This document shows positions 4,459 to 20,000 of a stretch of 64,000 nt of DNA, in pieces. Location: the IMG/VR virus record IMGVR_UViG_3300027899_000001, positions 341,017 to 405,016 of that record; one strand, written 5' to 3'. Numbering within the stretch: position 1 is the first letter of the stretch; the number at the start of each line of letters is the position of its first letter. The notes under the pieces were generated by a model, which saw nothing but the letters and a program-made list of their open reading frames with translations, was not told where the DNA came from and made no database searches. The position numbers and the translations under genes were made by a program.

Positions 4459-4466
4459 ATTATTTT

Positions 4467-7878: not shown

Positions 7879-7955
7879 GTTGAGAAATCTGAGAAGAGTT
7901 TAAATTGAAAATTCTAATAAAGATCGTTCGATGTAACTCTTTCTCTTACTACAAT
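7879..7955 (-). ncRNA. Y-RNA-like element, copy 1 (Ro60 operon leader)
   Basis: UUGUAGUAA-GAGAAAGAGU-UACAUCG...ACUCUUCUC-AGA-UUUCUCAA; ends pair; conserved with three other copies. Confidence 0.65.
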
Positions 7956-8098
7956 CAATTATATTATTATATATAAAGTCAAAAACTCTTTGTTTTTAGA
8001 CTTAGTGTTAAAATTTTGTTAAAGATTTATTTATTAAAATTATAGTGTAAATATAATAAAAATTCTTGACAGAAAAAACTTTTTATGTTAAAATTTTG

Positions 8099-8692
8099 TT
8101 AAAATAATGAAATATTTTTGGTACGATGTAATAATCCATATATTATAAATGCATGACCCATCTTTTTATTTGGATCTGTAATAACATCCATAAGAGATTT
8201 ATTCATCTTAACATGATTGTATCCATCAAAATCTATCAAATAAATATCTCGTTTTTCAGTTTTATATAATTCTAAAAGTTGCTTATATGCTTCGCTTTGT
8301 AATAAAGCTCTTTTATAAATAGGAATGTAAATTTTAATTCTTGCTTGAATATATGATAATTTTTCTCCATCCCAATAACTATATAAAGGTTTTGCATCTC
8401 TACCCATAGGATATCTGTGAGCAAAATTATCATTCCATATTTTTTCAGCCCATTCAAAATATGCTGGAGAAGGATCGCCTTTTTCATCTACAAATTCTTT
8501 ATATACCTTTGATGCTTGCCAGGCGTTTTCTACATTCTTTGCATAATATCCTTTATACAAATGCCCGCCCGGAAGAACAAAAGGAGATAAACCTTGAGTC
8601 CAATTTCCTGAACCTGCTCTTGAAGTTGTATTAATTACTACTGCGCCCTCAGGTATCTCATACCTTTTAGCGTATGATTCTACGTATAACAT
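8099..8692 (-). CDS. Conserved hypothetical protein (DUF6939-like, possibly NADAR-related)
   Basis: TTSR...LSPF...NVENAWQASKVY...YIQARIKIYIPIY...GHA pattern; family assignment from memory. Confidence 0.55.
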   Translation of the reverse strand: MLYVESYAKRYEIPEGAVVINTTSRAGSGNWTQGLSPFVLPGGHLYKGYYAKNVENAWQASKVYKEFVDEKGDPSPAYFEWAEKIWNDNFAHRYPMGRDAKPLYSYWDGEKLSYIQARIKIYIPIYKRALLQSEAYKQLLELYKTEKRDIYLIDFDGYNHVKMNKSLMDVITDPNKKMGHAFIIYGLLHRTKNISLF

Positions 8693-8883
8693 AGTGTAAA
8701 TATAATAAAAAATTCTGAATTGAAAATATTTATGTGTTAAAATTTTGTTAAAATGATGAAACTAAACTTTATAGTTAATATATAAATTATATAACCTTGT
8801 ACTTGGGGGTTTAGTGTTTGAAAGAACATTCGAGTTGGAGAAATACCAACGAATAAATTCTCAAATATAAAATAACATAAGGA

Positions 8884-9753
8884 ATGAAAATAAATTACTC
8901 AACTCAAAGGGTAACTGTGCCCACTGTATACGTGACCAAAGGTCGCCAAAGAGTAAAACAGTATGATAACACAATCTATCTTAAAAATGGAGACGAATTC
9001 GAAATAGAATTATTCAATCCATTACAATCTAAAGTTTTAGCGAAAATTGAACTCAACGGAAAGTATCTTGGTGCTGGAATAGTTTTACGTCCAGGTGAAA
9101 GAATGTTTCTTGAAAGATACATCGAAGAGTCCAGAAAATTCATGTTTCAAACATATGAAGTTGATGGTGGTGATACTAATGTTCAAGAAGCTATTAAACT
9201 TAATGGAGTATTAGAGGTTAAATTTTATAAAGAAACTGCACCTTCACAACCATATTACAGAAGTTCTACTATAACTTACACAACCAATCCAAGTTGGACA
9301 GTAACACCTACTTATACACATTATAATACAACAATAGGATATTCTGGTGTAAAAAGTTCAAAAGGAGACATAGAAAATCCTGGTGTTGTTTTTGGTAATG
9401 CTACTACTTTATCATGTTCTGTGGATAATACAAAATCATATGTAGATAGTATGCCCATTGGAGGTGAAGGATTAGGATTTGCGGGATGCGCTGATTTTTC
9501 AAGAGACTTTGCTCCACAAGAACAAACAATAGAAACTGGAAGAGTAGAAAAAGGTTCAAAATCAGATCAAGAATTTTCTACAGATAATACGCAATTTGAT
9601 GTTTATTATAGTTGGAGAAGTGTTTGGAAAATTCTTCCAGAATCTCAAAAGCCACTTATGTCTGAAGACTTAAAAGTATTTTGTACAAATTGTGGAGCTA
9701 AAAGAAAAAAATCTTCTCATAAATTTTGCCCAAACTGTGGCAACCAATTTTAA
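8884..9753 (+). CDS. Hypothetical protein with C-terminal zinc ribbon
   Basis: 289 aa, ends CTNC...FCPNCG. Confidence 0.8.
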   Translation: MKINYSTQRVTVPTVYVTKGRQRVKQYDNTIYLKNGDEFEIELFNPLQSKVLAKIELNGKYLGAGIVLRPGERMFLERYIEESRKFMFQTYEVDGGDTNVQEAIKLNGVLEVKFYKETAPSQPYYRSSTITYTTNPSWTVTPTYTHYNTTIGYSGVKSSKGDIENPGVVFGNATTLSCSVDNTKSYVDSMPIGGEGLGFAGCADFSRDFAPQEQTIETGRVEKGSKSDQEFSTDNTQFDVYYSWRSVWKILPESQKPLMSEDLKVFCTNCGAKRKKSSHKFCPNCGNQF

Positions 9754-9787
9754 TTATTAACTAAACACAAGGTTATATAAAAAACTA

Positions 9788-9811
9788 AAGAGGACTTTAA
9801 GTCCTCTTTTT
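9788..9811. terminator. Bidirectional terminator between convergent genes
   Basis: aaagaggac-ttaa-like loop-gtcctcttt with A and T tracts on either side. Confidence 0.75.
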
Positions 9812-10137
9812 TATGAATATAATTCATCAATTTTATTTTGAATATTAGATTTTGGACATAATCCTACTTGATGCCAAATATTACCGCCATCCTTAAAAAA
9901 TATCAATGTGGGAATACTTCGTATACCAAATAATTTAGTAACTTCATGACTTTCATCTACGTTACATTTAACAACTTCTATTTTTTGGTTTTCTTCTGAA
10001 AGTTCTTCCATAATTGGACCTAATACTCTACAAGGTCCACACCATTCTGCCCAAAAATCAACTATTATAGATTTTCCCGAATCTATAAGAATTTCTTTAT
10101 AATTTTTATCAGTTATTTCTCTCATATTATAATTCAT
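9811..10137 (-). CDS. trxA: Thioredoxin
   Basis: VDFWAEWCGPC, IRSIPT. Confidence 0.95.
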   Translation of the reverse strand: MNYNMREITDKNYKEILIDSGKSIIVDFWAEWCGPCRVLGPIMEELSEENQKIEVVKCNVDESHEVTKLFGIRSIPTLIFFKDGGNIWHQVGLCPKSNIQNKIDELYS

Positions 10138-10312
10138 TTATTAAAATTTGTGCTGCTATTTCACAATCATATTCATTTTCATATACGTGTGTACTTGCTC
10201 CTTTAACTACTGTACCATCTAAAGATTTTACTACAAACTCAAAATCATTATAAATAGGATGACAATGTATCTCAATCATATACCCATTATATTCGTAGTT
10301 TTTATTTATCAT
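10127..10312 (-). CDS. Hypothetical protein, paralog of 10309..10509
   Basis: Both begin M.N....YNGY.I.I and end E..A...IN.L. Confidence 0.65.
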   Translation of the reverse strand: MINKNYEYNGYMIEIHCHPIYNDFEFVVKSLDGTVVKGASTHVYENEYDCEIAAQILINEL

Positions 10313-10509
10313 GATACTATCCAGCCATCTTTATTTGCGGTTAAACGATTTATATACAGTTTTGCATGTAATTCAGCTTCTGATGGATATGGAAAACTTG
10401 GTCCTGTTGGTGTAATTATTTTTCCATCTTTCATAATAGTATACTGATAAGCTGTATGCGTTTCATTAATACTAATAAGATATCCGTTATAAACAATGTT
10501 ATTTTCCAT
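10309..10509 (-). CDS. Hypothetical protein, paralog of 10127..10312
   Basis: Shared YNGY.I.I and EAELHAKLYINRL pattern. Confidence 0.65.
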   Translation of the reverse strand: MENNIVYNGYLISINETHTAYQYTIMKDGKIITPTGPSFPYPSEAELHAKLYINRLTANKDGWIVS

Positions 10510-10522
10510 AATTTATTTATTT

Positions 10523-10599
10523 TGGTTGTCCCGGCAAGGCTCGAACTTGAAGTCTTCAGAATCAAAATCTGACGTGTTAACCGATTACACCACGGGACA
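10523..10599 (-). tRNA. tRNA-Gln(UUG), CCA encoded
   Basis: Cloverleaf UGUCCCG/CGGGACA, anticodon arm UCAGA-UUUUGAU-UCUGA, T loop UUCGAGC. Confidence 0.9.
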
Positions 10600-11241
10600 A
10601 TTTATAAAATCTAATAATTTTTCTATTGTAAAATATTTCAATTCATAATATGGTATTCTATATATTCTCCATCCTTTAGATCTTAAAAAATTATCTTTTT
10701 TCATATCATGTTCAACCCTTTTTAATCCGTTAGTAAAATGAGGTTCTCCATCATATTCAATAGCAATTTTTTGATCAACAAAAGCAAAATCTATAAAATA
10801 AGGATAAATTGGATATTCATTTATAATTGAATATTTTTCATAAAAACTATTATCTTTAAGCATTTTATTTATTATGCTTTCTCCTTTACTCATCAATCTT
10901 TTATGTCTATTTGTAAAAGTTGAAATATTATTTTCATCAGATAAATAGTCAAAACGTTTTTGTCTTAAAATTTCTTTAGATTGTTCGTTATGATGTTTAT
11001 CCTTGAATGCGTTAGTTATGTTTCCTTCTTTATAATTTTGTTTTAATGTGTTTGATTGTTGTAAAATAGACGCATTATTATGTTTTGTTTTTCCTTTTGC
11101 CCAGTGTATTTTTTCACCAGTTTTCAATGTTTTTCCCGTATCATGTGCTTTACCTTCTTCTGTATGAGTCCTCCAAATATGGCCTTTAATTCCATATTTA
11201 TTATATTCTTTTTCGCAATAAGGACATTTCATACAATACAT
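10585..11241 (-). CDS. Free-standing endonuclease (C2H2 finger + DUF559/Vsr-like domain)
   Basis: CPYC...HIWRTH; YFIDFAF...IAIEYDGEPH...D..L...GWRIYRI. Confidence 0.85.
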   Translation of the reverse strand: MYCMKCPYCEKEYNKYGIKGHIWRTHTEEGKAHDTGKTLKTGEKIHWAKGKTKHNNASILQQSNTLKQNYKEGNITNAFKDKHHNEQSKEILRQKRFDYLSDENNISTFTNRHKRLMSKGESIINKMLKDNSFYEKYSIINEYPIYPYFIDFAFVDQKIAIEYDGEPHFTNGLKRVEHDMKKDNFLRSKGWRIYRIPYYELKYFTIEKLLDFINCPVV

Positions 11242-11247
11242 TTAATT

Positions 11248-11325
11248 TGGTAGCGGGGAAGGGAATCGAACCCCTGTAGTACGGGTTATGAGCCCGAGCT
11301 GGAACCGTCTCCAGTCCACCCCGCG
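11248..11325 (-). tRNA. tRNA-Met(CAU), initiator type, CCA encoded
   Basis: C1:A72 mismatch, GGG/CCC anticodon stem, loop CUCAUAA. Confidence 0.92.
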
Positions 11326-11331
11326 ATATTT

Positions 11332-11538
11332 CTAAAAAGTTTTAATGTCTAGAGGATTGCTTAAATCAAGATGATCCTCTTTAACAATATAAGTTCTTCC
11401 AATCGATTTTTGTGAAAAATAACTCTCAAGTAATTCTCCTAATCTAAGATTTGTGTATTGATTTGGATTACTTTCTTTAGATAAAAGAATTTTCACTGCA
11501 TCTGATCTGTGAATTTCAAAAAAAGTATTTTCTGACAT
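11332..11538 (-). CDS. Hypothetical protein
   Basis: 68-aa ORF after a TATATAA promoter; ends in TAG just before tRNA-Met. Confidence 0.6.
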   Translation of the reverse strand: MSENTFFEIHRSDAVKILLSKESNPNQYTNLRLGELLESYFSQKSIGRTYIVKEDHLDLSNPLDIKTF

Positions 11539-11587
11539 ATTTTTAAGTATTTATATTTTATATATCAAAAATTCTAAAAGTTTTGAG

Positions 11588-11875
11588 TTAATTATAGGTA
11601 ACATTTATCGATTTCATAACCAATTTAGCAAGTTTTTTAGGCTTTTGTTTAGGATAACGTAAATACCATTGCGCACCATTTCTTCCATGAAATGAACCAT
11701 AAATTCCATAAAACATTACTTCTTTTATATAACGATTCATTGAATTATAGGTATAATCGCCGATAACTTTAGTTAAAGGAAATATTTTTCCTTTACGTTT
11801 TTCTGATTTCCAAATCTTAAGAATTTTCTTAATTTTTGTTTTTACTTGCTCCTGTGTATATGTTTTATGTCTCAT
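11588..11875 (-). CDS. Hypothetical basic protein
   Basis: 95-aa ORF. Confidence 0.6.
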   Translation of the reverse strand: MRHKTYTQEQVKTKIKKILKIWKSEKRKGKIFPLTKVIGDYTYNSMNRYIKEVMFYGIYGSFHGRNGAQWYLRYPKQKPKKLAKLVMKSINVTYN

Positions 11876-11885
11876 GATTTTATAA

Positions 11886-12293
11886 TTATTTTCTATCGCC
11901 TTTTAATTTCTGATCTATATCTAAAGGATTTCCAGTATCATGTTGCATACCTTTACCTTGATAAATTGAAAATTCTGCATCTTCACATTGACTAACATAA
12001 CTCATCCAATATCCCCAGTCTGAATATGCATCTGTTTCCCATATTTCAATATCTCCTGCATGAACAGTATAAGTTGTATGCATTCCAATTCCAAGTGTAC
12101 GTTCACCAAGAAAGTCTTCTACTCTATAGTCATAAACATCTACAATTATAGCTCCTGGAAAATCATTGTAAATAGTAATTGTACCTGTATGATTTTCTTC
12201 ACATGGTTCTTTATCTCCACAAGAAAAAATTCCAATAATAGCAATCATAAATAATGATGCTATAAATAATTTAAAAAAGTTTGATCGTTTCAT
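11886..12293 (-). CDS. Putative lipoprotein
   Basis: Signal peptide with lipobox IFSC followed by acidic residues. Confidence 0.7.
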   Translation of the reverse strand: MKRSNFFKLFIASLFMIAIIGIFSCGDKEPCEENHTGTITIYNDFPGAIIVDVYDYRVEDFLGERTLGIGMHTTYTVHAGDIEIWETDAYSDWGYWMSYVSQCEDAEFSIYQGKGMQHDTGNPLDIDQKLKGDRK

Positions 12294-12312
12294 TTGTTAT
12301 CATATTTAATTA

Positions 12313-12813
12313 TTAATAATTTTTGAATAAAGGAATTCCTAATGTTAATTCACCTGTCCATACTCCAGTATATTCATTCCATCCATATCCTATTCCTGCT
12401 TTAAAATATACTCTATTACCGTTATATTTTGAACCTACCATAACTATAGTTACTGGCTCTGTTCCTCCATAACCATAACTATCTTCATATTGATAACCAT
12501 CAGATGCTACACCCACTGATAAATAAAAAGTATAAATATCAGTTGGAGGTCCACTATATAAAGAAGCAGCAAATCCAAAAGAATTTATATTTTCTCCAGT
12601 CATAGGCATTGTAGTTGGCATCCAACCTCCTGTTAGTCCAAATAATCCTGATTGAAAGTCTGCGCCAACCACTCCATCAAGCCAAGAATATCCTCCGTGA
12701 ATACTTAAAGCATATGGTGTATGAGTTGTTAAATCATTTGTTTGTTGCGCATTTAATGTTGATGAAATGAATACAGACATCATCAAGCAAAAAACAAAAA
12801 GAAATTTTTTCAT
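12313..12813 (-). CDS. Putative outer-membrane beta-barrel protein
   Basis: Cleavable signal peptide (..LNA/QQ), alternating Gly/aromatic beta strands, C-terminal LTLGIPLF. Confidence 0.65.
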   Translation of the reverse strand: MKKFLFVFCLMMSVFISSTLNAQQTNDLTTHTPYALSIHGGYSWLDGVVGADFQSGLFGLTGGWMPTTMPMTGENINSFGFAASLYSGPPTDIYTFYLSVGVASDGYQYEDSYGYGGTEPVTIVMVGSKYNGNRVYFKAGIGYGWNEYTGVWTGELTLGIPLFKNY

Positions 12814-12910
12814 GTGTATAAATGTTTAGTTAATAAAAAATTTATATTTATATATATGTTAAAAGTTTTATATTTTGATGTAAACAAAATGATATTTGAT
12901 GTAAAATTTG

Positions 12911-12983
12911 TCCCTCTAGAGAGATTCGAACTCTCGACACGCGGGATTAGAAGCCGCTGGTCTGACCACTGACCTATAGAGGG
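12911..12983 (-). tRNA. tRNA with anticodon CUA (amber suppressor)
   Basis: 73-nt canonical cloverleaf CCCUCUA UA GGUC AGUGGUCA GACC A GCGGC UUCUAAU CCCGC GUGUC GAGAG UUCGAAU CUCUC UAGAGGG A; standard numbering puts CUA at 34-36; C31:C39 mismatch. Confidence 0.8.
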
Positions 12984-13011
12984 TAAAAGAGGGCATTTAA
13001 CCCTCATTGTT

Positions 13012-13338
13012 TTATTCTTTTTTTGTATGAAATTCTATACATTTATTTATTGCGTTTGGATATTGATTAAGAGGGTGATTTTCTTCAGGGTAATGATTTT
13101 CAATCTGTGAGAATTTTTTTCCTCTCATTAATCCATATGCTGCATATTTAATTCTTAATTCTAATCCGCCTACGTAAGATTTCCATGCGGCGTCTTTAGG
13201 TTCTATAATTCTTTCACCTTTTAAATGAACAGTCTTTCTTTGATTTTTCATAGCTCTTTGTAATGCTGCGCTTTGTTTAATATCTTTTTTTAAAGATTCG
13301 ATTGCGACTTTATCGATTGTTTTTTCTATTGTTTCCAT
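13012..13338 (-). CDS. Hypothetical protein in amber module
   Basis: 108 aa, YAAYGLMRGKKFSQIE segment; lies between the amber leader peptide and the CUA tRNA. Confidence 0.8.
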   Translation of the reverse strand: METIEKTIDKVAIESLKKDIKQSAALQRAMKNQRKTVHLKGERIIEPKDAAWKSYVGGLELRIKYAAYGLMRGKKFSQIENHYPEENHPLNQYPNAINKCIEFHTKKE

Positions 13339-13417
13339 AATGATTATTTTATTTTAGTTATTAAATTAATTGATCAAGGACATAATGTCTTTGAGATTGT
13401 CTTCGATAACCTAATCA

Positions 13418-13444
13418 TTAGGGAGATCTAATCTAGTGTGTCAT
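13418..13444 (-). promoter_or_regulatory. Putative leader peptide M-T-H-(TAG)-I-R-S-P-stop
   Basis: ATG ACA CAC TAG ATT AGA TCT CCC TAA TGA with A-rich start context (ttaaaactATG). Confidence 0.55.
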
Positions 13445-13507
13445 AGTTTTAAGTTTTAATTTAGTTTAAATCTAATAAAAATTTTTGATATAATTTTATT
13501 GTATATA

Positions 13508-13858
13508 TTAAAGTTTTGTTAATGTTTCTTCTTTTAAAGCTAATGGTAAATTGGATGTTAATTTATGAGATCTTTCTCCAGGTTCAATAGCGATCGCAGT
13601 TAATTGATTTCCAATATCTGGTTCAAGAAACGTTGTATACTTTAAATCGTAAAATTTAATTTTTTCTAAAAGGTGTTTAAGTTGTTGTTCATTTTCAACA
13701 GATAAGAATATCAAATACTTAGAATTAGTATTCCATTCCTTTGCGATTTCTGGATGTTCATGTTGAAATTCAATTGCAGCATGTGCGGCTTGAACTGCCT
13801 GATAACCCGGAGTTAAATCTCTACGGGTAATAACAATTAATTTGTGTATCTATTTCAT
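13508..13858 (-). CDS. pth2: Peptidyl-tRNA hydrolase type 2-like protein with in-frame TAG at codon 3
   Basis: MK*IHKLIVITRRDLTPGYQAVQAAHAAIEF...W...LIFLSVENEQQL...FLEPDIGNQLTAIAIEP...SNLPLA; the ORF track caught only the last 68 aa. Confidence 0.8.
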
Positions 13859-13859
13859 T

Positions 13860-13937: not shown

Positions 13938-13951
13938 ATTTTATTATATAT

Positions 13952-14065
13952 TTAAATTGAAAAAAGTTTCATAATTAATATAACTAACATAATTCCTATC
14001 ATACTCCAAAAAACTACTTTATAGGAATAAGATTTGTCTCTATTGTAATAATCTTCACTTTTCAT
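13952..14065 (-). CDS. 37-aa membrane peptide
   Basis: MKSEDYYNRDKSYSYKVVFWSMIGIMLVILIMKLFSI; ATGA overlap with upstream gene. Confidence 0.5.
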   Translation of the reverse strand: MKSEDYYNRDKSYSYKVVFWSMIGIMLVILIMKLFSI

Positions 14066-14379
14066 TTGTATTCTTCTCCAGATATATCTACTAGTGCTTT
14101 AGGAATAAAAATTTCATCTTGTCCTTCATACCATTCATTTGGCCAATTATCAATATCTAATATTGGTCTTTTAAATGCTTTTTTAATTTCTTTTCTAACC
14201 CATTTTAAATCTTTAATAGAAGTATGTTCAACCATTAAACTCTTATCTGAATAACTTGTTGGAACATCGTTTTTATCATAATAAACTTCTGATATGGAAA
14301 AATATCTTTCTTTTCCTTTTGCATATCTTCCAGTTATTACTCTAAAATTCCAATGATGTTGAGGTTTATATTTTTTCAT
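14062..14379 (-). CDS. Hypothetical phage protein
   Basis: WNFRV...FSISEVYYD...KAFKRPIL pattern. Confidence 0.7.
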   Translation of the reverse strand: MKKYKPQHHWNFRVITGRYAKGKERYFSISEVYYDKNDVPTSYSDKSLMVEHTSIKDLKWVRKEIKKAFKRPILDIDNWPNEWYEGQDEIFIPKALVDISGEEYK

Positions 14380-14402
14380 GATGTTGAGGTTTATATTTTT
14401 TC
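14353..14402. repeat. 25-bp perfect tandem duplication
   Basis: atgatgttgaggtttatattttttc x2, spanning the start of the 14062..14379 gene. Confidence 0.9.
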
Positions 14403-14403
14403 A

Positions 14404-14580
14404 TTAAAAATCATCTTCTAAATAATATACAAAATCATAAATATCTGCTACCATAGTTTCTTGTAAACATACATCGCAAGTATCTTCCCAAAATGATGCT
14501 ACACCTGCTAAAGTTTTGCCTTGTTTTTTAGCGCACTTTTCGCAAATTTGGACAATCATTTTTCTATCATTCTTTGACAT
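14404..14580 (-). CDS. Small Cys-rich hypothetical protein
   Basis: CEKC...CDVC; start reassigned to MSKNDRK. Confidence 0.55.
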   Translation of the reverse strand: MSKNDRKMIVQICEKCAKKQGKTLAGVASFWEDTCDVCLQETMVADIYDFVYYLEDDF

Positions 14581-14851
14581 CTTCTTCCTTTTTGACATCT
14601 TCTTCTTTTTTAGTATTTTCAATTATTTTTGGTCCTCTTCCTGTCATAACACCAAGAACTATTACCGCAACGATATCTAAAAATACTGTTAATCCTTGTA
14701 CATCATTAATTGTACCTCCGGCAGATCCTACACTAAGTCCAATTAAAAAACCCACAAATAATGCAGCGCCTAAAGGAATTAAAGCATACCATCTCCAACC
14801 TTTACGCCAAGCTAAAATAGTTAGAACTATTTGAAGAATAAATAAAATCAT
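14567..14851 (-). CDS. Small membrane protein
   Basis: Three hydrophobic segments, KKEEDV repeated tail. Confidence 0.7.
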   Translation of the reverse strand: MILFILQIVLTILAWRKGWRWYALIPLGAALFVGFLIGLSVGSAGGTINDVQGLTVFLDIVAVIVLGVMTGRGPKIIENTKKEEDVKKEEDVKE

Positions 14852-14884
14852 AATTTTATTTTATTAAATGAATACTAAAAATTG

Positions 14885-14966
14885 TGGCCAAAAAGGGACT
14901 CGAACCCTTACGTCTTTCAACACATGCTTTTGAGGCATACGCGTCTACCAATTTCGCCATCTGGCC
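14885..14966 (-). tRNA. tRNA-Leu(CAA)
   Basis: GGCCAGA/UUUGGCC acceptor, loop CUCAAAA, long variable arm, A73. Confidence 0.9.
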
Positions 14967-15265
14967 AGGCTAGCCTCCGCCGATCTTTCATCAGTTTCTT
15001 TTGTTAAACCTTTTCTCCAATTTCTTTTTCCTACAAATCCGTCTATAGCTGGTTTTCCTTCTCTATGAATTAAACAGTGTAAAAAATGTGAATTTAAACT
15101 TTGATGATTATTGAATTCTTTTTCACATTCGCATCTATATAAATTTTCATTAATTTTATATTTTGATGGTTGTTTTTCTTTTTTAACATAGATTTTACAA
15201 AAAGTTTTATGCCCATTTATTCCTTGAGAACTTTCAAATTCTCTTCCACATTCACACTTATACAT
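14945..15265 (-). pseudogene. Truncated zinc-finger endonuclease remnant
   Basis: Two YKCECG.EF...HC repeats and WRKGLTKETDER, no nuclease domain; frame runs into tRNA-Leu. Confidence 0.6.
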
Positions 15266-15318
15266 TTTTAATTTATATATTCATAAACAAATTTGGGAGA
15301 GTCAATGATTATTCTATG

Positions 15319-15406
15319 TGCTCTTGAAGGGGATCGAACCCTCAATCCTTTTTAAGGCATTAATTTTTGAGACTAACGTGTATTTCCTATTTTCCACCAC
15401 AAGAGC
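15319..15406 (-). tRNA. tRNA-Leu(CAA), second copy
   Basis: GCUCUUG/CAAGAGC acceptor, UUAGU-CUCAAAA-AUUAA, long variable arm. Confidence 0.85.
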
Positions 15407-15421
15407 AAAATTTATTTTTTG

Positions 15422-15495
15422 TACTGCGTGCGGAGCTCGAATCCGCGAATTCAGGATTGAAAGTCCTGTGTGTTAACCAACTTCACCAACGCAGC
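15422..15495 (-). tRNA. tRNA-Glu(UUC)
   Basis: CAGGA-CUUUCAA-UCCUG anticodon arm, full cloverleaf. Confidence 0.88.
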
Positions 15496-15504
15496 ATATT
15501 TAAT

Positions 15505-15615
15505 TTCAGAAATTCTGAGAATCGAGAATCACCGTGAAACTTTTGTCTATCACAAGGATGCCAACCCACCCTTCAACTGTTTTAACGCCGAGTTGGGGTC
15601 GCTTTATCAGTTGCA
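15505..15615 (-). ncRNA. Unidentified structured RNA with pseudoknot potential
   Basis: GC-rich island; CAACUG/CAGUUG stem, loop CCAACUC complementary to downstream GGGUUGG, two further hairpins. Confidence 0.45.
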
Positions 15616-15627
15616 TTTAATAACTTA

Positions 15628-15757
15628 AAAAAATCGTTACAAGGAATCAAACCCTGTTATTTCTTCGCTGAGTCCATACTATAGCTAGGATTATTCATTT
15701 ACTTCATAGATTTCACTACCTCTTGGTTTTTAAGCGAATCGAGGATAACGATTTTTT
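15628..15757 (-). ncRNA. tRNA-like structured RNA (acceptor stem + T arm, expanded core)
   Basis: AUCGUUA/UAACGAU stem stacked on CAGGG-UUUGAUU-CCUUG; internal CCUC/GAGG hairpin whose loop UUCGCU can pair with AGCGAA. Confidence 0.5.
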
Positions 15758-15772
15758 ATTTTTTCAAAGAAC

Positions 15773-16003
15773 TTATAATAATCTTTTATCTTTTTTATAT
15801 TTTTTAAATTCTACGTCTGTATCTATTGTTGTATCTAATTTATCTTTGTATTCTTTCATTAACCATTTTGCAAATCCCAATTTTAATTTAGTAGTTTCAA
15901 GATCATCAATAGTAAATAACATATTATATTGTATTGAATAATCTGCTCTATCTATTAAACTATCCAATTGATCTGTTATAACTTTTGATACTGATCCTGT
16001 CAT
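15773..16003 (-). CDS. Hypothetical protein
   Basis: 76-aa ORF; C-terminus resembles 16013..16213. Confidence 0.6.
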   Translation of the reverse strand: MTGSVSKVITDQLDSLIDRADYSIQYNMLFTIDDLETTKLKLGFAKWLMKEYKDKLDTTIDTDVEFKKYKKDKRLL

Positions 16004-16012
16004 ATTATATTT

Positions 16013-16213
16013 TTATCTATTTAAAAATTTATTCCAAATTTCATCTGCATCAATTTCTTTATTTAAATTTCCTTTAAGCTCTAAAATAAGAAATTTTACG
16101 AAATTAATATCTTTATTCATAATAGCCACATCTTTTGTATTCATTGATAATACTTCTTGAACATCAGATAAATGACTCATTGCTATTAAAGACGCTGTTG
16201 TTTTCATTATCAT
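16013..16213 (-). CDS. Hypothetical protein
   Basis: 66-aa ORF, SHLSDVQE...INFVKFLI. Confidence 0.65.
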   Translation of the reverse strand: MIMKTTASLIAMSHLSDVQEVLSMNTKDVAIMNKDINFVKFLILELKGNLNKEIDADEIWNKFLNR

Positions 16214-16272
16214 TTTTTATTTTATAGTGTAAATATAATAAAAAGATTTGACAGAAAAAAATATTTAAGCAA

Positions 16273-16578
16273 CTATTTTTCAGTTTCTACAAAATTTTCA
16301 TCTATAAAATTTGATAACTTTTTTGCTTCTGTTGGAGTTAATAAAATTTCATCTAAATGCATTTTACCTGTTTTCATATAGTGCCACATTACTTTCAATT
16401 TATCCCAAAATCTCGGTTTTTCTGAATAATTTCCATAACTAAACATTGCTAAAGTAAATTCTTGTCTTACTCTAGTTGTTTTAGATATCGTATCGTCAAA
16501 GTATTCTGTTTCACTTTGTACTACTAATAAATGTGCTCCACATTCACATTCAATTATGGTTTTCTTTGTTTCTTCCAT
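16273..16578 (-). CDS. Hypothetical protein
   Basis: 101-aa ORF with CECGAH. Confidence 0.7.
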   Translation of the reverse strand: MEETKKTIIECECGAHLLVVQSETEYFDDTISKTTRVRQEFTLAMFSYGNYSEKPRFWDKLKVMWHYMKTGKMHLDEILLTPTEAKKLSNFIDENFVETEK

Positions 16579-16808
16579 TATTGTTCTATTTTATATAAAT
16601 TATTATTAAATTCAAAATGATCTCCACAACAATTCTGAGATCCATCATCGTTTTCTAGTTCGCAAAATTGTTGTGTAGAACTTATAAACTTATGAATACA
16701 ATAATCACATTTAAATTCATGATTTTTAAAATCTACACAGTATTTTGAACATAAATGTTTATCATGTTCATATATGCAAGTCGTACAGTTTTTAGCAATA
16801 GTAATCAT
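16578..16808 (-). CDS. Cys-rich hypothetical protein
   Basis: Start reassigned to MITIAKNC because the listed start lies inside tRNA-Tyr. Confidence 0.6.
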   Translation of the reverse strand: MITIAKNCTTCIYEHDKHLCSKYCVDFKNHEFKCDYCIHKFISSTQQFCELENDDGSQNCCGDHFEFNNNLYKIEQ

Positions 16809-16823
16809 AATTTTAAATATTTG

Positions 16824-16904
16824 TGCCGCCGGAGGGACTCGAACCCCCAAGCCTTTCGGGTCTGATCTACAGTCAGGTGAGCCAACCAATTGCTCAACGT
16901 CGGC
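16824..16904 (-). tRNA. tRNA-Tyr(GUA)
   Basis: Loop CUGUAGA, long variable arm, A73. Confidence 0.88.
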
Positions 16905-16944
16905 GTTTGGCTGTCTTTCCAGCCTGTCATTATCAATTCGTGAA

Positions 16945-17136
16945 TTATATTAATTTAACATTAATTGCATTCAATCCTTTTGGTCCTTCTTTTAAATCGA
17001 ATTCGACTTTGTCGTTTTCGTTAATAGTATCTACACATCCTGTTACGTGTACAAAATACTCTTTAGAATCTCTGTTGTCTTTGATAAATCCAAATCCTTT
17101 AACTGAGTTAAAAAATTTTACTGTTCCTTCATTCAT
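16945..17136 (-). CDS. csp: Cold-shock protein
   Basis: GTVKFFN..KGFGFI, FVHV, GPKGLNAINV. Confidence 0.95.
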   Translation of the reverse strand: MNEGTVKFFNSVKGFGFIKDNRDSKEYFVHVTGCVDTINENDKVEFDLKEGPKGLNAINVKLI

Positions 17137-17184
17137 ATTATTAATTTATTTTAATTAGCATAGACACTATGTCTATGTTTACTT

Positions 17185-17550
17185 TTAACCATGTTCCATT
17201 TGTGAGTCATATTCAATTGCTTCAATAACTGAAACTGTTATATCTTTTATATCATCTATTTCTTTTATTTCCTTTTCCCAAAAGTGATTTGATATAAGTC
17301 TAGAATCTAATTCTTCATAGTTTACAATTTCTGTATATCCTGCTCCATAACCACTTCTTTTATTATATTCTGCTCTTTGGCTTATCCAATCATTTAGGGC
17401 GTCAATAAACATATCTCTTTTCATTTTTATTAAACAAAATTTATCGTCAGAATAATATCCATAATTACCTGGTAGCCATACATAATCTTCATCTGCTAAA
17501 ACTATTGTTAAACCATCAAAATTAAATGTTACTAATTCTTTTTCTTTCAT
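17185..17550 (-). CDS. Hypothetical protein
   Basis: 121-aa ORF. Confidence 0.65.
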   Translation of the reverse strand: MKEKELVTFNFDGLTIVLADEDYVWLPGNYGYYSDDKFCLIKMKRDMFIDALNDWISQRAEYNKRSGYGAGYTEIVNYEELDSRLISNHFWEKEIKEIDDIKDITVSVIEAIEYDSQMEHG

Positions 17551-18350
17551 GATATTAATTTTTTAAATTCTTCTATTTGTTTATATAATTTTTCTTTATT
17601 AATTTCATTTATAGGGTTAACCCATTTTATTCTAATAACTTTCCACTCATGCTGTAATAAAAAATCATCTTTTATTTTATCTTTTTCTTTTCGTTCTTCA
17701 TGTTGTTTTCCATCTATTTCTAAAGCTATTTTTTTATCTACAAATGCAAAATCAATCCACCATCTATTAACTTTATAGTCTCTATGCCATCCAGTTATAT
17801 TTTCATTTTCAAATAAAGATATAAAGTATTTTTCAGGATATGATGGCGCATTATCTTTTCTAGATTTCCATCCTATAAAAGTTCCGTTTGCAATTCTTTC
17901 GTGTGCTTTATCAGAAATCTTTTTCTTAGCAGATTCACTACAACCATGGTGTTTTCTTGCACATTCTCTAGAACAATATATTCGCCTTTTATATCTTGTT
18001 TTATATTCTTTTTTACATTCAGGACATATTTTTTGAATATATTCTAATGATAATATATCAGTTTCATGCTGTTTATACCTTAGAGTTTTTCCTATTTTTT
18101 CTTTAGTTTCTTTACTTAATATACGTTTTTTATTGTTGAAAGAATTTGAACAGCTTTTAGAACAAAAAGTACTATAGCGATGTTTATAATCAAAACCAAC
18201 ATTACAATTTTTACATTTTTTAGGAGCTTTATTATATTCAGCTATTCTTTTTTGTTTTAATAATGATAGTTTTTCTCTTCCTTTTTTAAATGCATTTCTT
18301 GCATTTTCTTGATGTTTTAATGAACCTTGATAATTTTTATCTTTAGACAT
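17547..18350 (-). CDS. Free-standing endonuclease (Cys-rich N-terminus + DUF559/Vsr-like domain)
   Basis: CKNC..FCSKSC, CPEC..YCSREC; SYPEKYF, WIDFAF...LEIDGKQH. Confidence 0.85.
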   Translation of the reverse strand: MSKDKNYQGSLKHQENARNAFKKGREKLSLLKQKRIAEYNKAPKKCKNCNVGFDYKHRYSTFCSKSCSNSFNNKKRILSKETKEKIGKTLRYKQHETDILSLEYIQKICPECKKEYKTRYKRRIYCSRECARKHHGCSESAKKKISDKAHERIANGTFIGWKSRKDNAPSYPEKYFISLFENENITGWHRDYKVNRWWIDFAFVDKKIALEIDGKQHEERKEKDKIKDDFLLQHEWKVIRIKWVNPINEINKEKLYKQIEEFKKLIS

Positions 18351-18410
18351 ATTGTTTTTATATTATATATCTAAAAATTAGTCGAGTTTTAATTATTCGA
18401 ACAAAAAATG

Positions 18411-18490
18411 TAGGGTGAACGGGATTCGAACCCGCGTAAAAACTCCTGATCCCAAATCAGGCGAGATAAACCTGGCTCCTCTACCACCCT
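18411..18490 (-). tRNA. tRNA-Pro(UGG)
   Basis: CCUGA-UUUGGGA-UCAGG anticodon arm. Confidence 0.88.
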
Positions 18491-18498
18491 ATTTATTG

Positions 18499-18582
18499 TG
18501 CTCTCTGTCGGACTCGAACCGACATCCATTTAAGGACAGCTTCTTAGGCTGATGCGTCTTATTCCAGTTGCGCCAAGAGAGC
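18499..18582 (-). tRNA. tRNA-Leu(AAG)
   Basis: CAGC-CUAAGAA-GCUG arm; body nearly identical to tRNA-Leu(UAG) at 18678. Confidence 0.85.
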
Positions 18583-18588
18583 ATTTTG

Positions 18589-18673
18589 TGCCTCTGAAGG
18601 GAGTCGAACCCTCATGGTCTTTCGACCCACGGATTTTAAGTCCGTTGCGTACTACCAATTTCGCCACAGAGGC
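18589..18673 (-). tRNA. tRNA-Leu(UAA)
   Basis: ACGGA-CUUAAAA-UCCGU, long variable arm. Confidence 0.92.
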
Positions 18674-18677
18674 ATTG

Positions 18678-18761
18678 TGCTCTCTGTCGGACTCGAACCG
18701 ACATCCAACTAAGGCGTGCTCCTAAGGCACGTGCGTCTTAATCCAGTTGCGCCAAGAGAGC
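18678..18761 (-). tRNA. tRNA-Leu(UAG)
   Basis: CGUGC-CUUAGGA-GCACG. Confidence 0.9.
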
Positions 18762-18791
18762 AAAAATCAACATGTCAAAGACCTAAAATTG

Positions 18792-18864
18792 TGGAGCAAA
18801 TTGTATCGAAACAATACCTTATGTTCTTCAGACATACGTGACACACCTATTACACCATTGCTCC
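18792..18864 (-). tRNA. tRNA-Phe(GAA), atypical T arm
   Basis: UAUGU-CUGAAGA-ACAUA; T arm AUUGU-UUCGAU-ACAAU lacks G53:C61. Confidence 0.75.
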
Positions 18865-18867
18865 ATT

Positions 18868-18918
18868 TATGGCTGGTGATTTGAATCCCATTTAATCGTT
18901 CTACCTTAACGAACCATA
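18868..18918 (-). ncRNA. Mini tRNA-like element lacking an anticodon arm
   Basis: UAUGGUU/AGCCAUA stem, D-like hairpin CGUU-AAGGUAG-AACG, T-like UUCAAAU loop. Confidence 0.45.
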
Positions 18919-18929
18919 TTTTTTATTTG

Positions 18930-19010
18930 CTGCCCTGAGTGGATTCGAACCACTATCCCAAGTTTCAAAGACTCAGATAATTAACTTTCGCACCTTTATA
19001 CGACAGGGCA
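18930..19010 (-). tRNA. tRNA-Gln(UUG) with enlarged D loop
   Basis: U1:A72, G73, loop CUUUGAA; D region contains extra GCGAAAGU. Confidence 0.8.
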
Positions 19011-19012
19011 AT

Positions 19013-19086
19013 AAACTGAGAAATTCGGTTAGAGCATTTTTTCTAATTTCCAGGTTTCGAAGTATCTCTTTACCTTACTACAGTTT
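19013..19086 (-). ncRNA. Y-RNA-like element, copy 2
   Basis: AAACUGUAGUAA-GGUAAAGAGA-UACUUCG...GCUCUAACC-GAA-UUUCUCAGUUU; fills the spacer between two tRNA-Gln genes. Confidence 0.65.
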
Positions 19087-19087
19087 G

Positions 19088-19162
19088 CTGTTCTACCTGG
19101 ATTCGAACCAGGATGGACCTGGCTTCAGAGGCCAGCGCGATATCCAGTTACGCTATAGAACA
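19088..19162 (-). tRNA. tRNA-Gln(CUG)
   Basis: CUGGC-CUCUGAA-GCCAG, U1:A72, G73. Confidence 0.9.
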
Positions 19163-19166
19163 ATTT

Positions 19167-19248
19167 AAGTTGAGAAATGTGGAGTGAGTGTCTTTTTTAT
19201 TAGATTTGCATGTCTTTTACGAAGTAACTCATTTCCTTACTACAACTT
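19167..19248 (-). ncRNA. Y-RNA-like element, copy 3
   Basis: AAGUUGUAGUAA-GGAAAUGAGU-UACUUCG...ACUCACUCC-ACA-UUUCUCAACUU. Confidence 0.65.
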
Positions 19249-19905
19249 TATATTAAATATTTTTTCATAATTTTGAATATCTGATAAAAATATCATTTCA
19301 ATATTATTATAATTACTCAAAATATATCTCATTTTCTTTTTATCTTCTTCTTCATATCTTCCTTTAACTTCAAAGAACTTTTTTAAATTTGGACACCAAA
19401 AATCTGGATAATATGTGTGAATTTCCCCGAATTCATTTGTCCAAGATAAACCATCAGAAAAAGGCTTTATCCAATCTTTATCTATAATATTTAAAATAAC
19501 TGCGAAACGTTTTTCATAGGTTCCTTGTACTTTTATCTTTGTTCCATCAGGTTTTATAATTTCATACCATTTACATTTTCCGCCAGTTATCCATCCTTTA
19601 TTATTTATAGATATTTTTCTTTTTGTTTCTAAATCTCTTGGACCATTTTTTCTTCCTTTCAATTTAGAAGGTCTTCCTTTTTTAGTATCCCAAACTCTAT
19701 TTTCAGAATGAATAGCCCAAATATGAAATTTTACGCCTCTAGGATTATCATATTCTTTTTCACATATTGGACATTTATGAAAACCATTAGGTTGTTTATA
19801 AATATTAACTTTATTTTGTCTATTACCACATTTTTCATAATGTTTCTTAAAATTTGATAAACTTATTTCTTTATTACATTTATCACAAATTCTTTTATTT
19901 ACCAT
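19240..19905 (-). CDS. Free-standing endonuclease (zinc fingers + TnsA-like PD-(D/E)XK)
   Basis: CDKC..H...C, CPIC..H...H; QGTYE, YYPDF...FEVKG. Confidence 0.85.
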   Translation of the reverse strand: MVNKRICDKCNKEISLSNFKKHYEKCGNRQNKVNIYKQPNGFHKCPICEKEYDNPRGVKFHIWAIHSENRVWDTKKGRPSKLKGRKNGPRDLETKRKISINNKGWITGGKCKWYEIIKPDGTKIKVQGTYEKRFAVILNIIDKDWIKPFSDGLSWTNEFGEIHTYYPDFWCPNLKKFFEVKGRYEEEDKKKMRYILSNYNNIEMIFLSDIQNYEKIFNIKL

Positions 19906-19951
19906 ATTTTTATTTTATATATTCATATAGTAATTCTTTAATTTACTACTT

Positions 19952-20000
19952 AATGTAACACTTGTTCATTACTACATTGCTGAGAAAGCCGAAAAGTGTG
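19952..20000 (-). ncRNA. Circularly permuted Y-RNA-like element, copy 4
   Basis: ACACUUUUC-GGC-UUUCUCA GCAA UGUAGUAAU-GAACAAGUGU-UACAUU: the two conserved strands in reversed order joined by a GNRA loop. Confidence 0.6.

What the first reader, a model, noticed from the sequence alone, without database searches (positions are those of the whole stretch)
7879..20000. Four-member family of Y-RNA-like elements linked to a phage Ro60
Seen: elements at 7879-7955, 19013-19086, 19167-19248 and 19952-20000 share UGUAGUAA-[stem]-UAC(A/U)U on one strand and [9-nt stem]-NNN-UUUCUCA on the other. The stems change with compensation (GAGAAAGAGU/ACUCUUCUC, GGUAAAGAG/CUCUAACC, GGAAAUGAGU/ACUCACUCC, GAACAAGUGU/ACACUUUUC), and the terminal helix carries a single bulged U. 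Copies 2 and 3 abut tRNA-Gln genes, so tRNA processing would release them. Established: Ro60/Rsr binds a bulged terminal helix of Y RNAs encoded near its gene. Inference: these are compact Y RNAs lacking the tRNA-like domain of YrlA, possibly a distinct class.
Basis: partly seen in the sequence, partly recalled or inferred. Interest (0 to 1): 0.82.

Follow-up and report, generated by a model that had tools for sequence, protein, structure and literature searches.

The report
Ro60-linked Y-like RNAs in giant phage
Three short structured RNA genes, plus the broken stump of a fourth, in a 405-kb phage belong to a large uncatalogued RNA family that clusters beside phage Ro60 genes and inside phage tRNA arrays, and they are most likely the Y-RNA partners of that protein.

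Summary
Three co-linear elements (E1 7956-7878, E2 19086-13, E3 19248-19167, minus strand) share a covarying structure. A 4-6 bp closing helix with an invariant bulged U is followed by a UAA / AAN-UUU internal loop, then a 3+5 bp helix, then an invariant UUAC(U/A)UCG.

A model built from nine copies finds about 160 distinct relatives in uncultured phage contigs. In 70 of 80 phage Ro60 (TROVE) loci at least one copy is present. All are on the Ro60 strand, at a median of 330 nt from the gene, far closer than tRNA genes are (0/2000 permutations).

The window protein is a true Ro60 homologue by profile and by fold.

Relatives carry the same module around no insert, a nested tRNA, a YrlA-like permuted tRNA-like domain, or as a capped hairpin inside a CCA-ended tRNA-like RNA. 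E4 is the truncated 5' part of that last type, cut by a homing-endonuclease-like ORF.

The YrlA signature GNCGAAN0-1G is absent and no Rfam family matches.

Verdict: a new variant of a known kind (Y RNA-like partners of phage Ro60). Ro60 binding and expression are untested.

The parts
7878..7956 (-). E1: compact Y-like RNA, 371 nt upstream of the Ro60 gene. The bulged U is at 7951, the UAA loop at 7948-7946, and UUU-CU-CAAC at 7887-7879.
   Evidence: R1 scores 82.2 bits; pattern match; sequence read.
7800..7836 (-). Hairpin followed by a U-run after E1. It is a likely intrinsic terminator of an E1 transcription unit.
   Evidence: RNAfold gives -14.9 kcal/mol with a following U-tract. The tool's terminator scan did not call it because the loop is 16 nt.
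5798..7501 (-). Ro60 (TROVE + vWA/MIDAS) gene, 567 aa.
   Evidence: Pfam TROVE 4.7e-9. The profile hits phiLo phiRo60 at 1.4e-41, Rsr at 8e-17, human RO60 at 4e-16 and Xenopus Ro60 at 6e-14. The AF2 model has pLDDT 83 and the top 13 Foldseek PDB hits are all Ro60 proteins. The MIDAS residues D384-x-S386-G-S388 are invariant.
19013..19086 (-). E2: compact Y-like RNA wedged between tRNA-Gln(CUG) and a tRNA-Gln(UUG)-like gene. The bulged U is at 19080.
   Evidence: R1 scores 80.2 bits. In the syntenic locus L009 only a 20-nt spacer lies between the two tRNA-Gln genes.
19167..19248 (-). E3: compact Y-like RNA that ends 4 nt before tRNA-Gln(CUG). The bulged U is at 19242.
   Evidence: R1 scores 90.7 bits. 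Its homologue L009:797-887 is in the same position.
19952..20026 (-). E4: truncated 5' part of a 'P-class' tRNA-like RNA. It holds the acceptor 5' strand GGGGGAA (20024-20018), an A-rich linker, and the Y-module as a hairpin capped by GCAA (19999-19958; bulged U at 19974), followed by UUACAU. The T arm, the acceptor 3' strand and the CCA are missing.
   Evidence: Alignment with intact copies. R2 scores 31 bits here against 92.9 bits for intact L009:586-718. No complementary acceptor strand exists in the window.
19240..19905 (-). Homing-endonuclease-like ORF (221 aa, zinc-finger plus PD-(D/E)XK-like). It occupies the place of the 3' part of the P-class gene.
   Evidence: Weak Pfam hits to Phage_endo_I, zf-HYPF and DUF7487. 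Synteny with L009, which has no ORF at this position.
19087..19162 (-). tRNA-Gln(CUG), flanked by E3 on its 5' side and E2 on its 3' side.
   Evidence: ARAGORN; Rfam tRNA 56.9 bits.
18930..19010 (-). Degenerate tRNA-Gln(UUG)-like gene that abuts the 3' end of E2.
   Evidence: Rfam tRNA 19.3 bits, below threshold. It folds as a cloverleaf with z = -2.5. ARAGORN does not call it.
20029..20112 (-). tRNA-Cys, lying 2 nt upstream of the E4 unit.
   Evidence: ARAGORN; Rfam tRNA 57.2 bits. The order is the same in L009.

Best explanation
E1, E2 and E3 are genes for small non-coding RNAs of a phage-specific Y RNA-like family, the RNA partners of the phage-encoded Ro60.

Each RNA closes its 5' and 3' ends into a helix with an invariant bulged U. 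An asymmetric internal loop (UAA opposite AAN-UUU) follows, then a 3+5 bp helix, then an invariant single-stranded UUAC(U/A)UCG. I call this conserved 'Y-module' the proposed Ro60-binding platform.

The variable distal part is a short A-rich loop in the window's copies. In relatives it is a tRNA or a tRNA-like domain. It would gate Ro60 or tether it to other factors, as Y RNAs do with PNPase.

E1 is probably its own transcription unit, with a terminator before the Ro60 gene. E2 and E3 are co-transcribed with the tRNA array and released by RNase P and RNase Z cuts at the adjoining tRNAs.

E4 is the remnant of a fourth architecture: a tRNA-like RNA with a free CCA end that carries the Y-module as a capped hairpin. 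A homing-endonuclease-like gene has cut it off.

Shown here: the structure (by covariation), the RNA strand, the family's extent, its specific linkage to Ro60 genes, and the Ro60 identity of the protein.

Inferred, not shown: Ro60 binding, which part of the module is contacted, expression and processing, and the downstream function.
For: Structure and strand:
- 13 of 14 pairs are compensatory and 94.8% of cells are paired, with 0/500 shuffles reaching this.
- G-U pairs outnumber A-C 84 to 27 on the TROVE/tRNA strand.

Linkage to Ro60:
- 70 of 80 phage TROVE loci carry at least one element. Six of the ten without one have under 1.2 kb of upstream sequence.
- All 141 hits are on the TROVE strand and 108 lie within 2 kb of the gene, with TROVE identity to the window protein as low as 35%.
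- The nearest element is a median 330 nt from TROVE. An equal number of randomly chosen same-strand tRNA genes gives 2310 nt, and 0/2000 permutations come as close.
- A TROVE-blind pattern scan of viral contigs gave 50 model-positive contigs, of which 27 have TROVE confirmed.
- The same pattern in bacterial genomes gave 1 weak, false hit in 590 kb.

The protein is Ro60.

Parallels with described Y RNAs:
- The location rule (within 2 kb, same strand), a 5'/3' stem, and YUAY after the stem (UUAC here) match (PMC4201824).
- A subset has a T-AS-D tRNA-like domain.
- The closest solved homologue, phiLo phiRo60, binds short stem-bulge-stem hairpin RNAs encoded upstream of its gene (PMC12135203).

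Processing context:
- 77 of 164 distinct elements abut a tRNA gene within 15 nt.
- E1 is followed by a hairpin plus U-run.
Against: - There is no direct evidence of transcription or of Ro60 binding.
- The bacterial Ro60-site signature GNCGAAN0-1G is absent (0/164). CGAA at the UCG position occurs in only 31 of 164 copies.
- There is no match to any Rfam family.
- Single-sequence folds are no more stable than shuffles.
- Strand concordance with TROVE is partly trivial, because the tRNA arrays and TROVE are co-oriented.
- For 23 of the 50 model-positive contigs the presence of TROVE could not be determined.
- Many copies lie more than 10 kb from TROVE inside tRNA arrays, so a tRNA-related role independent of Ro60 is not excluded.
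Confidence: 0.7

Rival explanations
1. The module is a processing or stability element of phage tRNA arrays. In this reading it is a leader-trailer helix recognised by an RNase or some other phage protein, and it has nothing to do with Ro60. Its proximity to TROVE arises only because TROVE sits in tRNA regions.
For: - 77 of 164 elements abut tRNA genes.
- 17 enclose an ARAGORN-recognised tRNA, some scoring 57-59 bits on the Rfam tRNA model.
- E2-E4 lie 11.5-12.5 kb from TROVE.
Against: - Elements are much closer to TROVE than tRNA genes are (median 330 nt against 2310 nt, 0/2000 permutations). Even the nearest of all tRNAs is a median 782 nt away.
- 94 of 164 copies enclose nothing.
- E1 and many other TROVE-proximal copies have no adjacent tRNA.
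- About half of the nested tRNAs duplicate an anticodon present elsewhere in the same locus.
Confidence: 0.15
2. The module is a cis-regulatory leader of the Ro60 mRNA, for example an autoregulatory binding site in the 5' UTR, rather than a stand-alone RNA.
For: In many loci the nearest copy ends only 80-130 nt before the TROVE start codon and lies on the same strand.
Against: - 37 of 141 copies lie downstream of TROVE, and many lie kilobases away in tRNA arrays.
- Most genomes have several copies.
- E1 is separated from TROVE by a hairpin plus U-run and a short ORF.
Confidence: 0.06
3. The elements are DNA-level repeats, for example targets or footprints of the homing endonucleases that pepper the tRNA array, or a miniature mobile element.
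For: - Homing-endonuclease-like ORFs lie at 10588-11241, 17550-18350, 19243-19905 and 23833-24534.
- One of them abuts E4 and E3.
Against: - The compensatory changes preserve pairing rather than sequence.
- The G-U over A-C bias (84 against 27) marks one transcribed strand.
- The loop sequences are conserved over Ro60 divergence down to 35% identity.
Confidence: 0.04
4. It is a small self-cleaving ribozyme. Circular permutation, as seen in E4, is typical of hammerhead and twister ribozymes.
For: - Permuted and linear topologies of the same conserved core both exist.
- Ribozymes are known next to phage tRNAs (my own knowledge).
Against: - No ribozyme family in Rfam matches even at E <= 10.
- The permutation is fully explained by the P-class tRNA-like architecture, whose acceptor stem covaries.
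- No candidate cleavage-site geometry was found.
Confidence: 0.02

Closest known systems
Bacterial YrlA / YrlB / Yrn2 Y RNAs (Chen et al. 2014, PMC4201824)
   Same: - They are encoded within 2 kb of the Ro60 gene on the same strand, with several per genome.
- The 5' and 3' ends pair into a stem with a conserved 5'-strand motif.
- YUAY follows the stem.
- One class carries a tRNA-like domain in the order (V)-T-AS-D, and another class (YrlB, Yrn2) is a simple hairpin.
- Phage examples, 22 of them, were already listed.
   Different: - The signature GNCGAAN0-1G is absent (0/164).
- The conserved elements here are instead G-U(bulge)-AG-UAA, UUU-CU and UUAC(U/A)UCG.
- Many copies are embedded in tRNA arrays.
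- Two extra architectures exist: a normal-order tRNA nested in the module, and a CCA-ended tRNA-like RNA with a capped module.
- The family is found so far only in uncultured large phages.
Thermus phage phiLo Yrl1/Yrl2 with phiRo60 (PMC12135203; PDB 9KOP, 9L5Y)
   Same: - phiRo60 is the closest solved homologue of the window protein (1.4e-41).
- Its partner RNAs are short stem-bulge-stem hairpins without a tRNA-like domain, encoded just upstream of the Ro60 gene. This is the arrangement of E1.
   Different: - The phiLo RNAs were defined by a CGAA motif about 10 nt from the 5' end, which contributes to binding.
- Here UCG is invariant, but it lies after the helix and is followed by AA in only about a fifth of copies.
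- Protein identity is only about 20%.
Metazoan Y RNAs (Rfam Y_RNA)
   Same: They share the overall logic: a terminal helix with a single bulged pyrimidine on the 5' strand next to an internal loop, and a variable distal loop.
   Different: There is no sequence or covariance-model similarity (no Rfam hit). Metazoan Y RNAs are also Pol III transcripts with La-binding tails.
Circularly permuted tRNA genes and the tmRNA tRNA-like domain (my own knowledge; a lead only, not tested)
   Same: The P-class relatives and the T-AS-D relatives are tRNA-shaped RNAs whose parts are in permuted order or interrupted by a large hairpin. Most have an encoded CCA end.
   Different: No BHB splice motif, no tag reading frame and no G3-U70 pair were seen. 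The tmRNA model does not match the P-class loci.

Membership tests
Y RNA in the functional sense (a Ro60-bound ncRNA) | Encoded close to the Ro60 gene on the same strand (the criterion used for bacteria and phages: within 2 kb) | tested here: met
   E1 lies 371 nt upstream of the gene. Family-wide, 108 of 141 copies lie within 2 kb and all are on the same strand. The median nearest distance is 330 nt, against 2310 nt for random tRNAs.
Y RNA in the functional sense (a Ro60-bound ncRNA) | The 5' and 3' ends form a conserved, bulged helix next to an internal loop | tested here: met
   The covarying helix has an invariant bulged U and conserved UAA / UUU loop strands.
Y RNA in the functional sense (a Ro60-bound ncRNA) | Physically bound by Ro60 | not testable with these tools
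   This needs EMSA or RIP-seq with the protein encoded at 5801-7501.
Y RNA in the functional sense (a Ro60-bound ncRNA) | Accumulates as a discrete small RNA | not tested
YrlA (Chen et al. 2014) | GNCGAAN0-1G motif near the 5' end | tested here: not met
   0 of 164 distinct copies have it in the first 45 nt, and only 4 have it anywhere.
YrlA (Chen et al. 2014) | tRNA-like domain with T, AS and D stem-loops | tested here: not met
   The window copies E1-E3 have none, and 0 of 94 compact copies have a T-loop motif. 58 of 70 long relatives do, some in T-AS-D order.
YrlA (Chen et al. 2014) | Conserved YUAY following the stem | tested here: met
   At the UUAC position U is 100%, A 93% and C 100%.
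phiLo-type Yrl hairpins | Stem-bulge-stem hairpin carrying a CGAA motif | tested here: inconclusive
   The stem-bulge-stem shape is met. UCGAA occurs at the conserved UCG in 31 of 164 copies (E1 and E2 yes, E3 no), and it sits distal to the helix rather than in it.
Any described RNA family (Rfam 15, including Y_RNA, ribozymes and tmRNA) | Covariance-model match | tested here: not met
   Only tRNA, and GOLLD or tmRNA elsewhere, were found. Nothing was found on the elements even at E <= 10.
Ro60 / Rsr protein family (the neighbouring gene) | TROVE HEAT-repeat ring plus a vWA domain with a MIDAS motif | tested here: met
   Pfam TROVE. Full-length profile match to phiRo60 and C-terminal two-thirds matches to Rsr and RO60. 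The AF2 model's best 13 PDB neighbours are all Ro60 proteins. DxSGS is invariant.

The most novel reading that the evidence does not exclude
The conserved module is a portable 'Ro60 handle' that huge phages graft onto tRNA scaffolds in at least four topologies: bare, wrapped around a normal tRNA, around a permuted tRNA-like domain, and as a capped hairpin replacing an arm of a CCA-ended tRNA-like RNA.

If so, phage Ro60 is being coupled directly to the tRNA world. It might act in surveillance or protection of the phage's own tRNA pool, or it might deliver tRNA decoys against host anticodon nucleases or tRNA-handling enzymes. The P-class RNAs might even be substrates for CCA-adding or aminoacylation enzymes while bound to Ro60.
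Probability: 0.3. Interest if true: 0.8.

Novelty: new variant of a known kind. Interest (0 to 1): 0.62.

Why it matters
Ro60/Y RNA complexes are conserved from bacteria to humans, yet their bacterial and viral biology is known from only a handful of species.

This family gives about 160 natural sequence variants of one putative Ro60-binding module. It has clear invariant nucleotides to mutate and four natural distal architectures to compare, and it comes from phages that also carry dozens of tRNAs.

If binding is confirmed, three things follow:
- It defines a second sequence solution for Ro60 recognition, one without GNCGAAG.
- It shows that Y RNAs can be produced as parts of tRNA operons.
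- It makes the proposed link between Ro60, tRNA mimicry and phage-host conflict over tRNAs directly testable.

It also supplies two covariance models that could annotate a currently unannotated RNA class in viral metagenomes.

Tried and rejected
- Rfam at gathering and at permissive thresholds, on the elements and on relatives: only tRNA, GOLLD and tmRNA were found, with no Y RNA or ribozyme family.
- A plus-strand reading as a hairpin-ribozyme-like loop B (AGAAA / UUAC). I dropped it because G-U pairs outnumber A-C 84 to 27 on the minus strand, the cap of E4 is a GNRA loop only on the minus strand, and no loop A or cleavage site exists.
- A short ORF starting at the AUG of AUGGGGGAAAAG and running through E4. 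I rejected it because neither the AUG nor the reading frame is conserved among relatives. The purine run is instead the 5' strand of a covarying acceptor stem.
- A group I intron carrying the endonuclease ORF. There is no intron model hit, and no 3' exon (T arm plus complementary acceptor strand) exists anywhere in the window.
- An N-terminal extension of the Ro60 ORF through a recoded stop. The upstream ATG at 7776 is out of frame.
- Megablast of 16 kb against GenBank phages: no match. The best GenBank phage Ro60 is 33.6% identical, from an uncultured 635-kb phage, and that phage also has an element 575 nt upstream of the gene. Vibrio and Streptomyces phage Ro60 loci have none.
- A bacterial genome scan with the DNA pattern returned chance matches only.
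- The sigma-70 promoter scan was uninformative.
- Mapping the phiRo60 RNA-contact residues onto the window protein showed no position-for-position conservation, so I did not use it.

Full report
**What is in the window**

All tRNA genes (14), the TROVE gene (5798-7501) and the four elements lie on the minus strand. Read on that strand, E1 (7956-7878), E2 (19086-19013) and E3 (19248-19167) have the same plan:
- a closing helix of 4-6 bp;
- a bulged U;
- two more pairs (AG with CU);
- an internal loop with UAA on the 5' side and NNN-UUU on the 3' side;
- a 3-bp helix, a small 2x1 loop and a 5-bp helix;
- UUAC(U/A)UCG;
- a variable A/U-rich loop ending in an A-run.

The joint pattern occurs three times, against 0.03 expected. 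An unfiltered covariance-model scan of the whole window finds only these three.

E3 ends 4 nt before tRNA-Gln(CUG). E2 begins 1 nt after that tRNA's discriminator base and ends 2 nt before a degenerate tRNA-Gln(UUG)-like gene. E1 stands alone, 371 nt upstream of the TROVE start, and is followed by a hairpin plus U-run.

**The structure is real and the RNA strand is the minus strand**

On the nine first copies, RNAalifold predicts 14 pairs, 7 of them with compensatory changes.

On 71 distinct copies collected without reference to TROVE:
- 94.8% of cells are paired, against 76.1% in shuffles (0/500 shuffles reach this);
- 13 of 14 pairs have double changes;
- sliding the partner columns drops pairing to 38-61%.

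G-U pairs outnumber A-C 84 to 27 on this strand. Single-sequence folding energies are unremarkable (z = +0.14 to -1.36), as expected for A/U-rich helices. The case therefore rests on covariation.

Across 115 distinct copies the invariant or near-invariant positions are the bulged U (100%), the following A/G-G, the loop U-A-A (85/84/98%), U-A-C-U-U-C-G (100/93/100/83/100/100/96%), and U-U-C on the 3' side (99/97/98%).

**The neighbouring protein is Ro60**

- Pfam TROVE is above its cut-off.
- A profile of 39 phage homologues matches phiLo phiRo60 over its full length (1.4e-41). It also matches Deinococcus Rsr, human RO60 and Xenopus Ro60 (8e-17 to 6e-14).
- The AlphaFold model (pLDDT 83.4) has as its best 13 PDB neighbours only Ro60, Rsr and phiRo60 entries.
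- The vWA MIDAS residues DxSGS are invariant.

**Linkage to Ro60**

The window belongs to a 405-kb IMG/VR contig. More than 420 viral stretches encode relatives of the protein, and I examined the best 80 loci with 10-kb flanks.

Model R1 finds 141 elements in them:
- all are on the TROVE strand;
- at least one is present in 70 of 80 loci, and six of the ten empty loci have under 1.2 kb of upstream sequence;
- 108 lie within 2 kb of the gene;
- TROVE identity to the window protein goes as low as 35%.

TROVE sits in tRNA-rich regions, so I ran a control. In 56 loci the nearest element is a median 330 nt from TROVE. The same number of randomly chosen same-strand tRNA genes gives a median of 2310 nt, and 0 of 2000 permutations come as close. 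Even the nearest of all tRNAs is a median 782 nt away.

In the reverse direction, a TROVE-blind DNA pattern scan of viral contigs gave 101 model hits in 50 contigs. TROVE is confirmed on 27 of these, and for the other 23 only part of the contig was seen (manual tally).

The same kind of pattern in 596 Gb of bacterial genomes returned chance matches only. One weak model hit in 590 kb lacked the 3' motif, TROVE and tRNAs.

The best GenBank phage relative of the protein (33.6% identical, an uncultured 635-kb phage) also has an element 575 nt upstream. Vibrio and Streptomyces phage Ro60 loci do not.

**The family has four architectures, and this explains element 4**

Of 164 distinct copies, 94 are compact (70-110 nt) and none has a T-loop motif. 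The other 70 are long, and 58 of these have one. The long ones are of two kinds:
- The module encloses a tRNA in normal order, for example L168:12414-12555. The Rfam tRNA model scores 57-59 bits inside three of them (L168, L155, L140).
- The module encloses a permuted tRNA-like domain with the T arm first, then a closed acceptor-like hairpin, then the D arm, for example L125:9766-9918 and L005:972-1155. This is the order described for YrlA (PMC4201824).

In the fourth kind, which I call P-class, the order of the module's halves is reversed and the 'closing' helix is capped by a short loop, often GNRA. The whole hairpin then sits inside a tRNA-like RNA made of:
- a purine-rich acceptor 5' strand (GGGGAAG-like);
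- an A-rich linker;
- the module hairpin;
- UUACNUCG;
- a further hairpin;
- a T arm;
- the complementary acceptor 3' strand;
- usually ACCA.

RNAalifold supports 21 pairs for this form, 16 with compensatory changes, including G-C to C-G swaps in the acceptor stem. Model R2 finds 21 strong copies (63-126 bits) in the TROVE loci, all on the TROVE strand.

Window element 4 aligns with the first about 75 nt of this RNA (20026-19952) and then stops. It scores 31 bits, against 92.9 bits for the intact copy in L009. No complementary acceptor strand or spare T arm exists in the window.

L009 (Ro60 77% identical) is syntenic. Its order is tRNA-Cys, intact P-class RNA, the E3 homologue, tRNA-Gln(CUG), then tRNA-Gln(UUG), with no ORF in between. 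In the window, a 221-aa homing-endonuclease-like ORF (19905-19243) occupies the place of the missing 3' part.

E4 is therefore a truncated gene whose module hairpin is still intact. E2 is an extra copy that L009 lacks.

**Comparison with what is known**

Y RNAs next to bacterial and phage Ro60 genes are established. YrlA-type RNAs were reported in 254 bacteria and 22 phages. They are defined by GNCGAAN0-1G near the 5' end, YUAY after the stem, and a V-T-AS-D tRNA-like domain. Hairpin-type second Y RNAs (YrlB, Yrn2) lack that domain (PMC4201824).

phiLo phiRo60 binds two short stem-bulge-stem RNAs encoded upstream of its gene. A CGAA motif contributes three- to four-fold to affinity (PMC12135203).

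Jumbo phages are known to encode TROVE proteins (PMC7824862).

The present family shares several features with these: the location rule, the 5'/3' stem, YUAY, tRNA mimicry in a subset, and hairpin-only members. It differs in four respects:
- it lacks GNCGAAN0-1G (0/164);
- it has its own invariant nucleotides;
- it is embedded in tRNA arrays (77 of 164 abut a tRNA);
- it shows two architectures not described for Y RNAs.

The 5'-strand G-U-A-G-U-A-A-G could be a diverged counterpart of G-N-C-G-A-A-G. This is my inference only. Full-text searches found no paper describing this family.

**Mechanism proposed**

Established for other Ro60 proteins: Ro60 binds the bulged stem of Y RNAs, and the distal part of the Y RNA gates the ring or tethers partners such as PNPase.

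Inferred here:
- The phage Ro60 binds the conserved module.
- E1 is transcribed on its own and terminated at about 7795.
- E2 and E3 are cut out of the tRNA precursor by RNase P and RNase Z.
- Different distal parts (an A-rich loop, a tRNA, a tRNA-like domain) adapt Ro60 to different partners.

Which of the two conserved blocks contacts the protein is open. The candidates are the bulge/UAA/UUU block and the UUACUUCG block.

**Limits**

- There is no binding assay.
- The whole-contig co-occurrence of the family with TROVE was not measured.
- E-values from the shortened model calibration are rough.

Noticed in passing
window 12910-12983 (-): A tRNA with a CUA anticodon (called 'Pyl' by ARAGORN; Rfam tRNA 59.8 bits). 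It is an amber suppressor, which suggests that TAG may be recoded in part of this 405-kb phage genome.
   Followed up: no
window 10588-11241 (-), 17550-18350 (-), 19243-19905 (-), 23833-24534 (+): Four homing-endonuclease-like ORFs lie in and next to the tRNA array (DUF559/REase_MTES_1575 twice, a weak Phage_endo_I-like hit, and NUMOD3). One of them has replaced the 3' part of an RNA gene (E4).
   Followed up: partly
window 18930-19010 (-) and 18866-18910 (-): A tRNA-Gln(UUG)-like gene has about 11 extra nucleotides between the D arm and the anticodon stem. It is below the Rfam tRNA threshold and ARAGORN does not call it. It is followed by a short segment with an acceptor-like pairing and a D-arm-like hairpin but no anticodon arm. 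These may be decaying tRNA genes or further tRNA mimics.
   Followed up: partly
window 7800-7836: The terminator-like hairpin after E1, when read on the plus strand, is CUG-AG-UAA ... UUU-CU-CAG. It imitates the proximal half of the Y-module without the bulged U (R1 14.8 bits, E 1.7). This may be coincidence or a degenerate antisense copy.
   Followed up: no
L140:8489-8905 and L140:20889-21296: A GOLLD RNA (277 bits) lies between Y-like elements and 1.1 kb upstream of a phage Ro60 gene. A tmRNA gene lies in the same locus. The adjacency of GOLLD to Ro60 and Y-like RNAs may be worth a systematic look.
   Followed up: no
L168:12414-12555, L155:5801-5945, L140:7779-7920 and others: tRNAs that score as genuine (57-59 bits) are nested inside the Y-module. 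Their anticodon is duplicated elsewhere in the same locus in about half of the cases. It is unclear whether these are functional tRNAs with a Ro60 handle or mimics.
   Followed up: partly
window 2716-5231 (-), 9811-10137 (-), 22295-23071 (-), 24567-26683 (-): Auxiliary genes lie around the locus: NAD synthase, an isochorismatase-family (nicotinamidase-like) protein, dCMP deaminase, thioredoxin, a papain-family peptidase, and an SPFH/NfeD pair.
   Followed up: no
L171:3453-3563 (phage csAssE-Sib, OR575929.1): In this phage, UUACUUCGAAAAUUAG precedes the tRNA-Tyr gene, about 250 nt upstream of its 'Ro sixty-related protein' gene. The R1 hit is weak (16.5 bits, E 0.54). It may be a very diverged relative of the module.
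   Followed up: no
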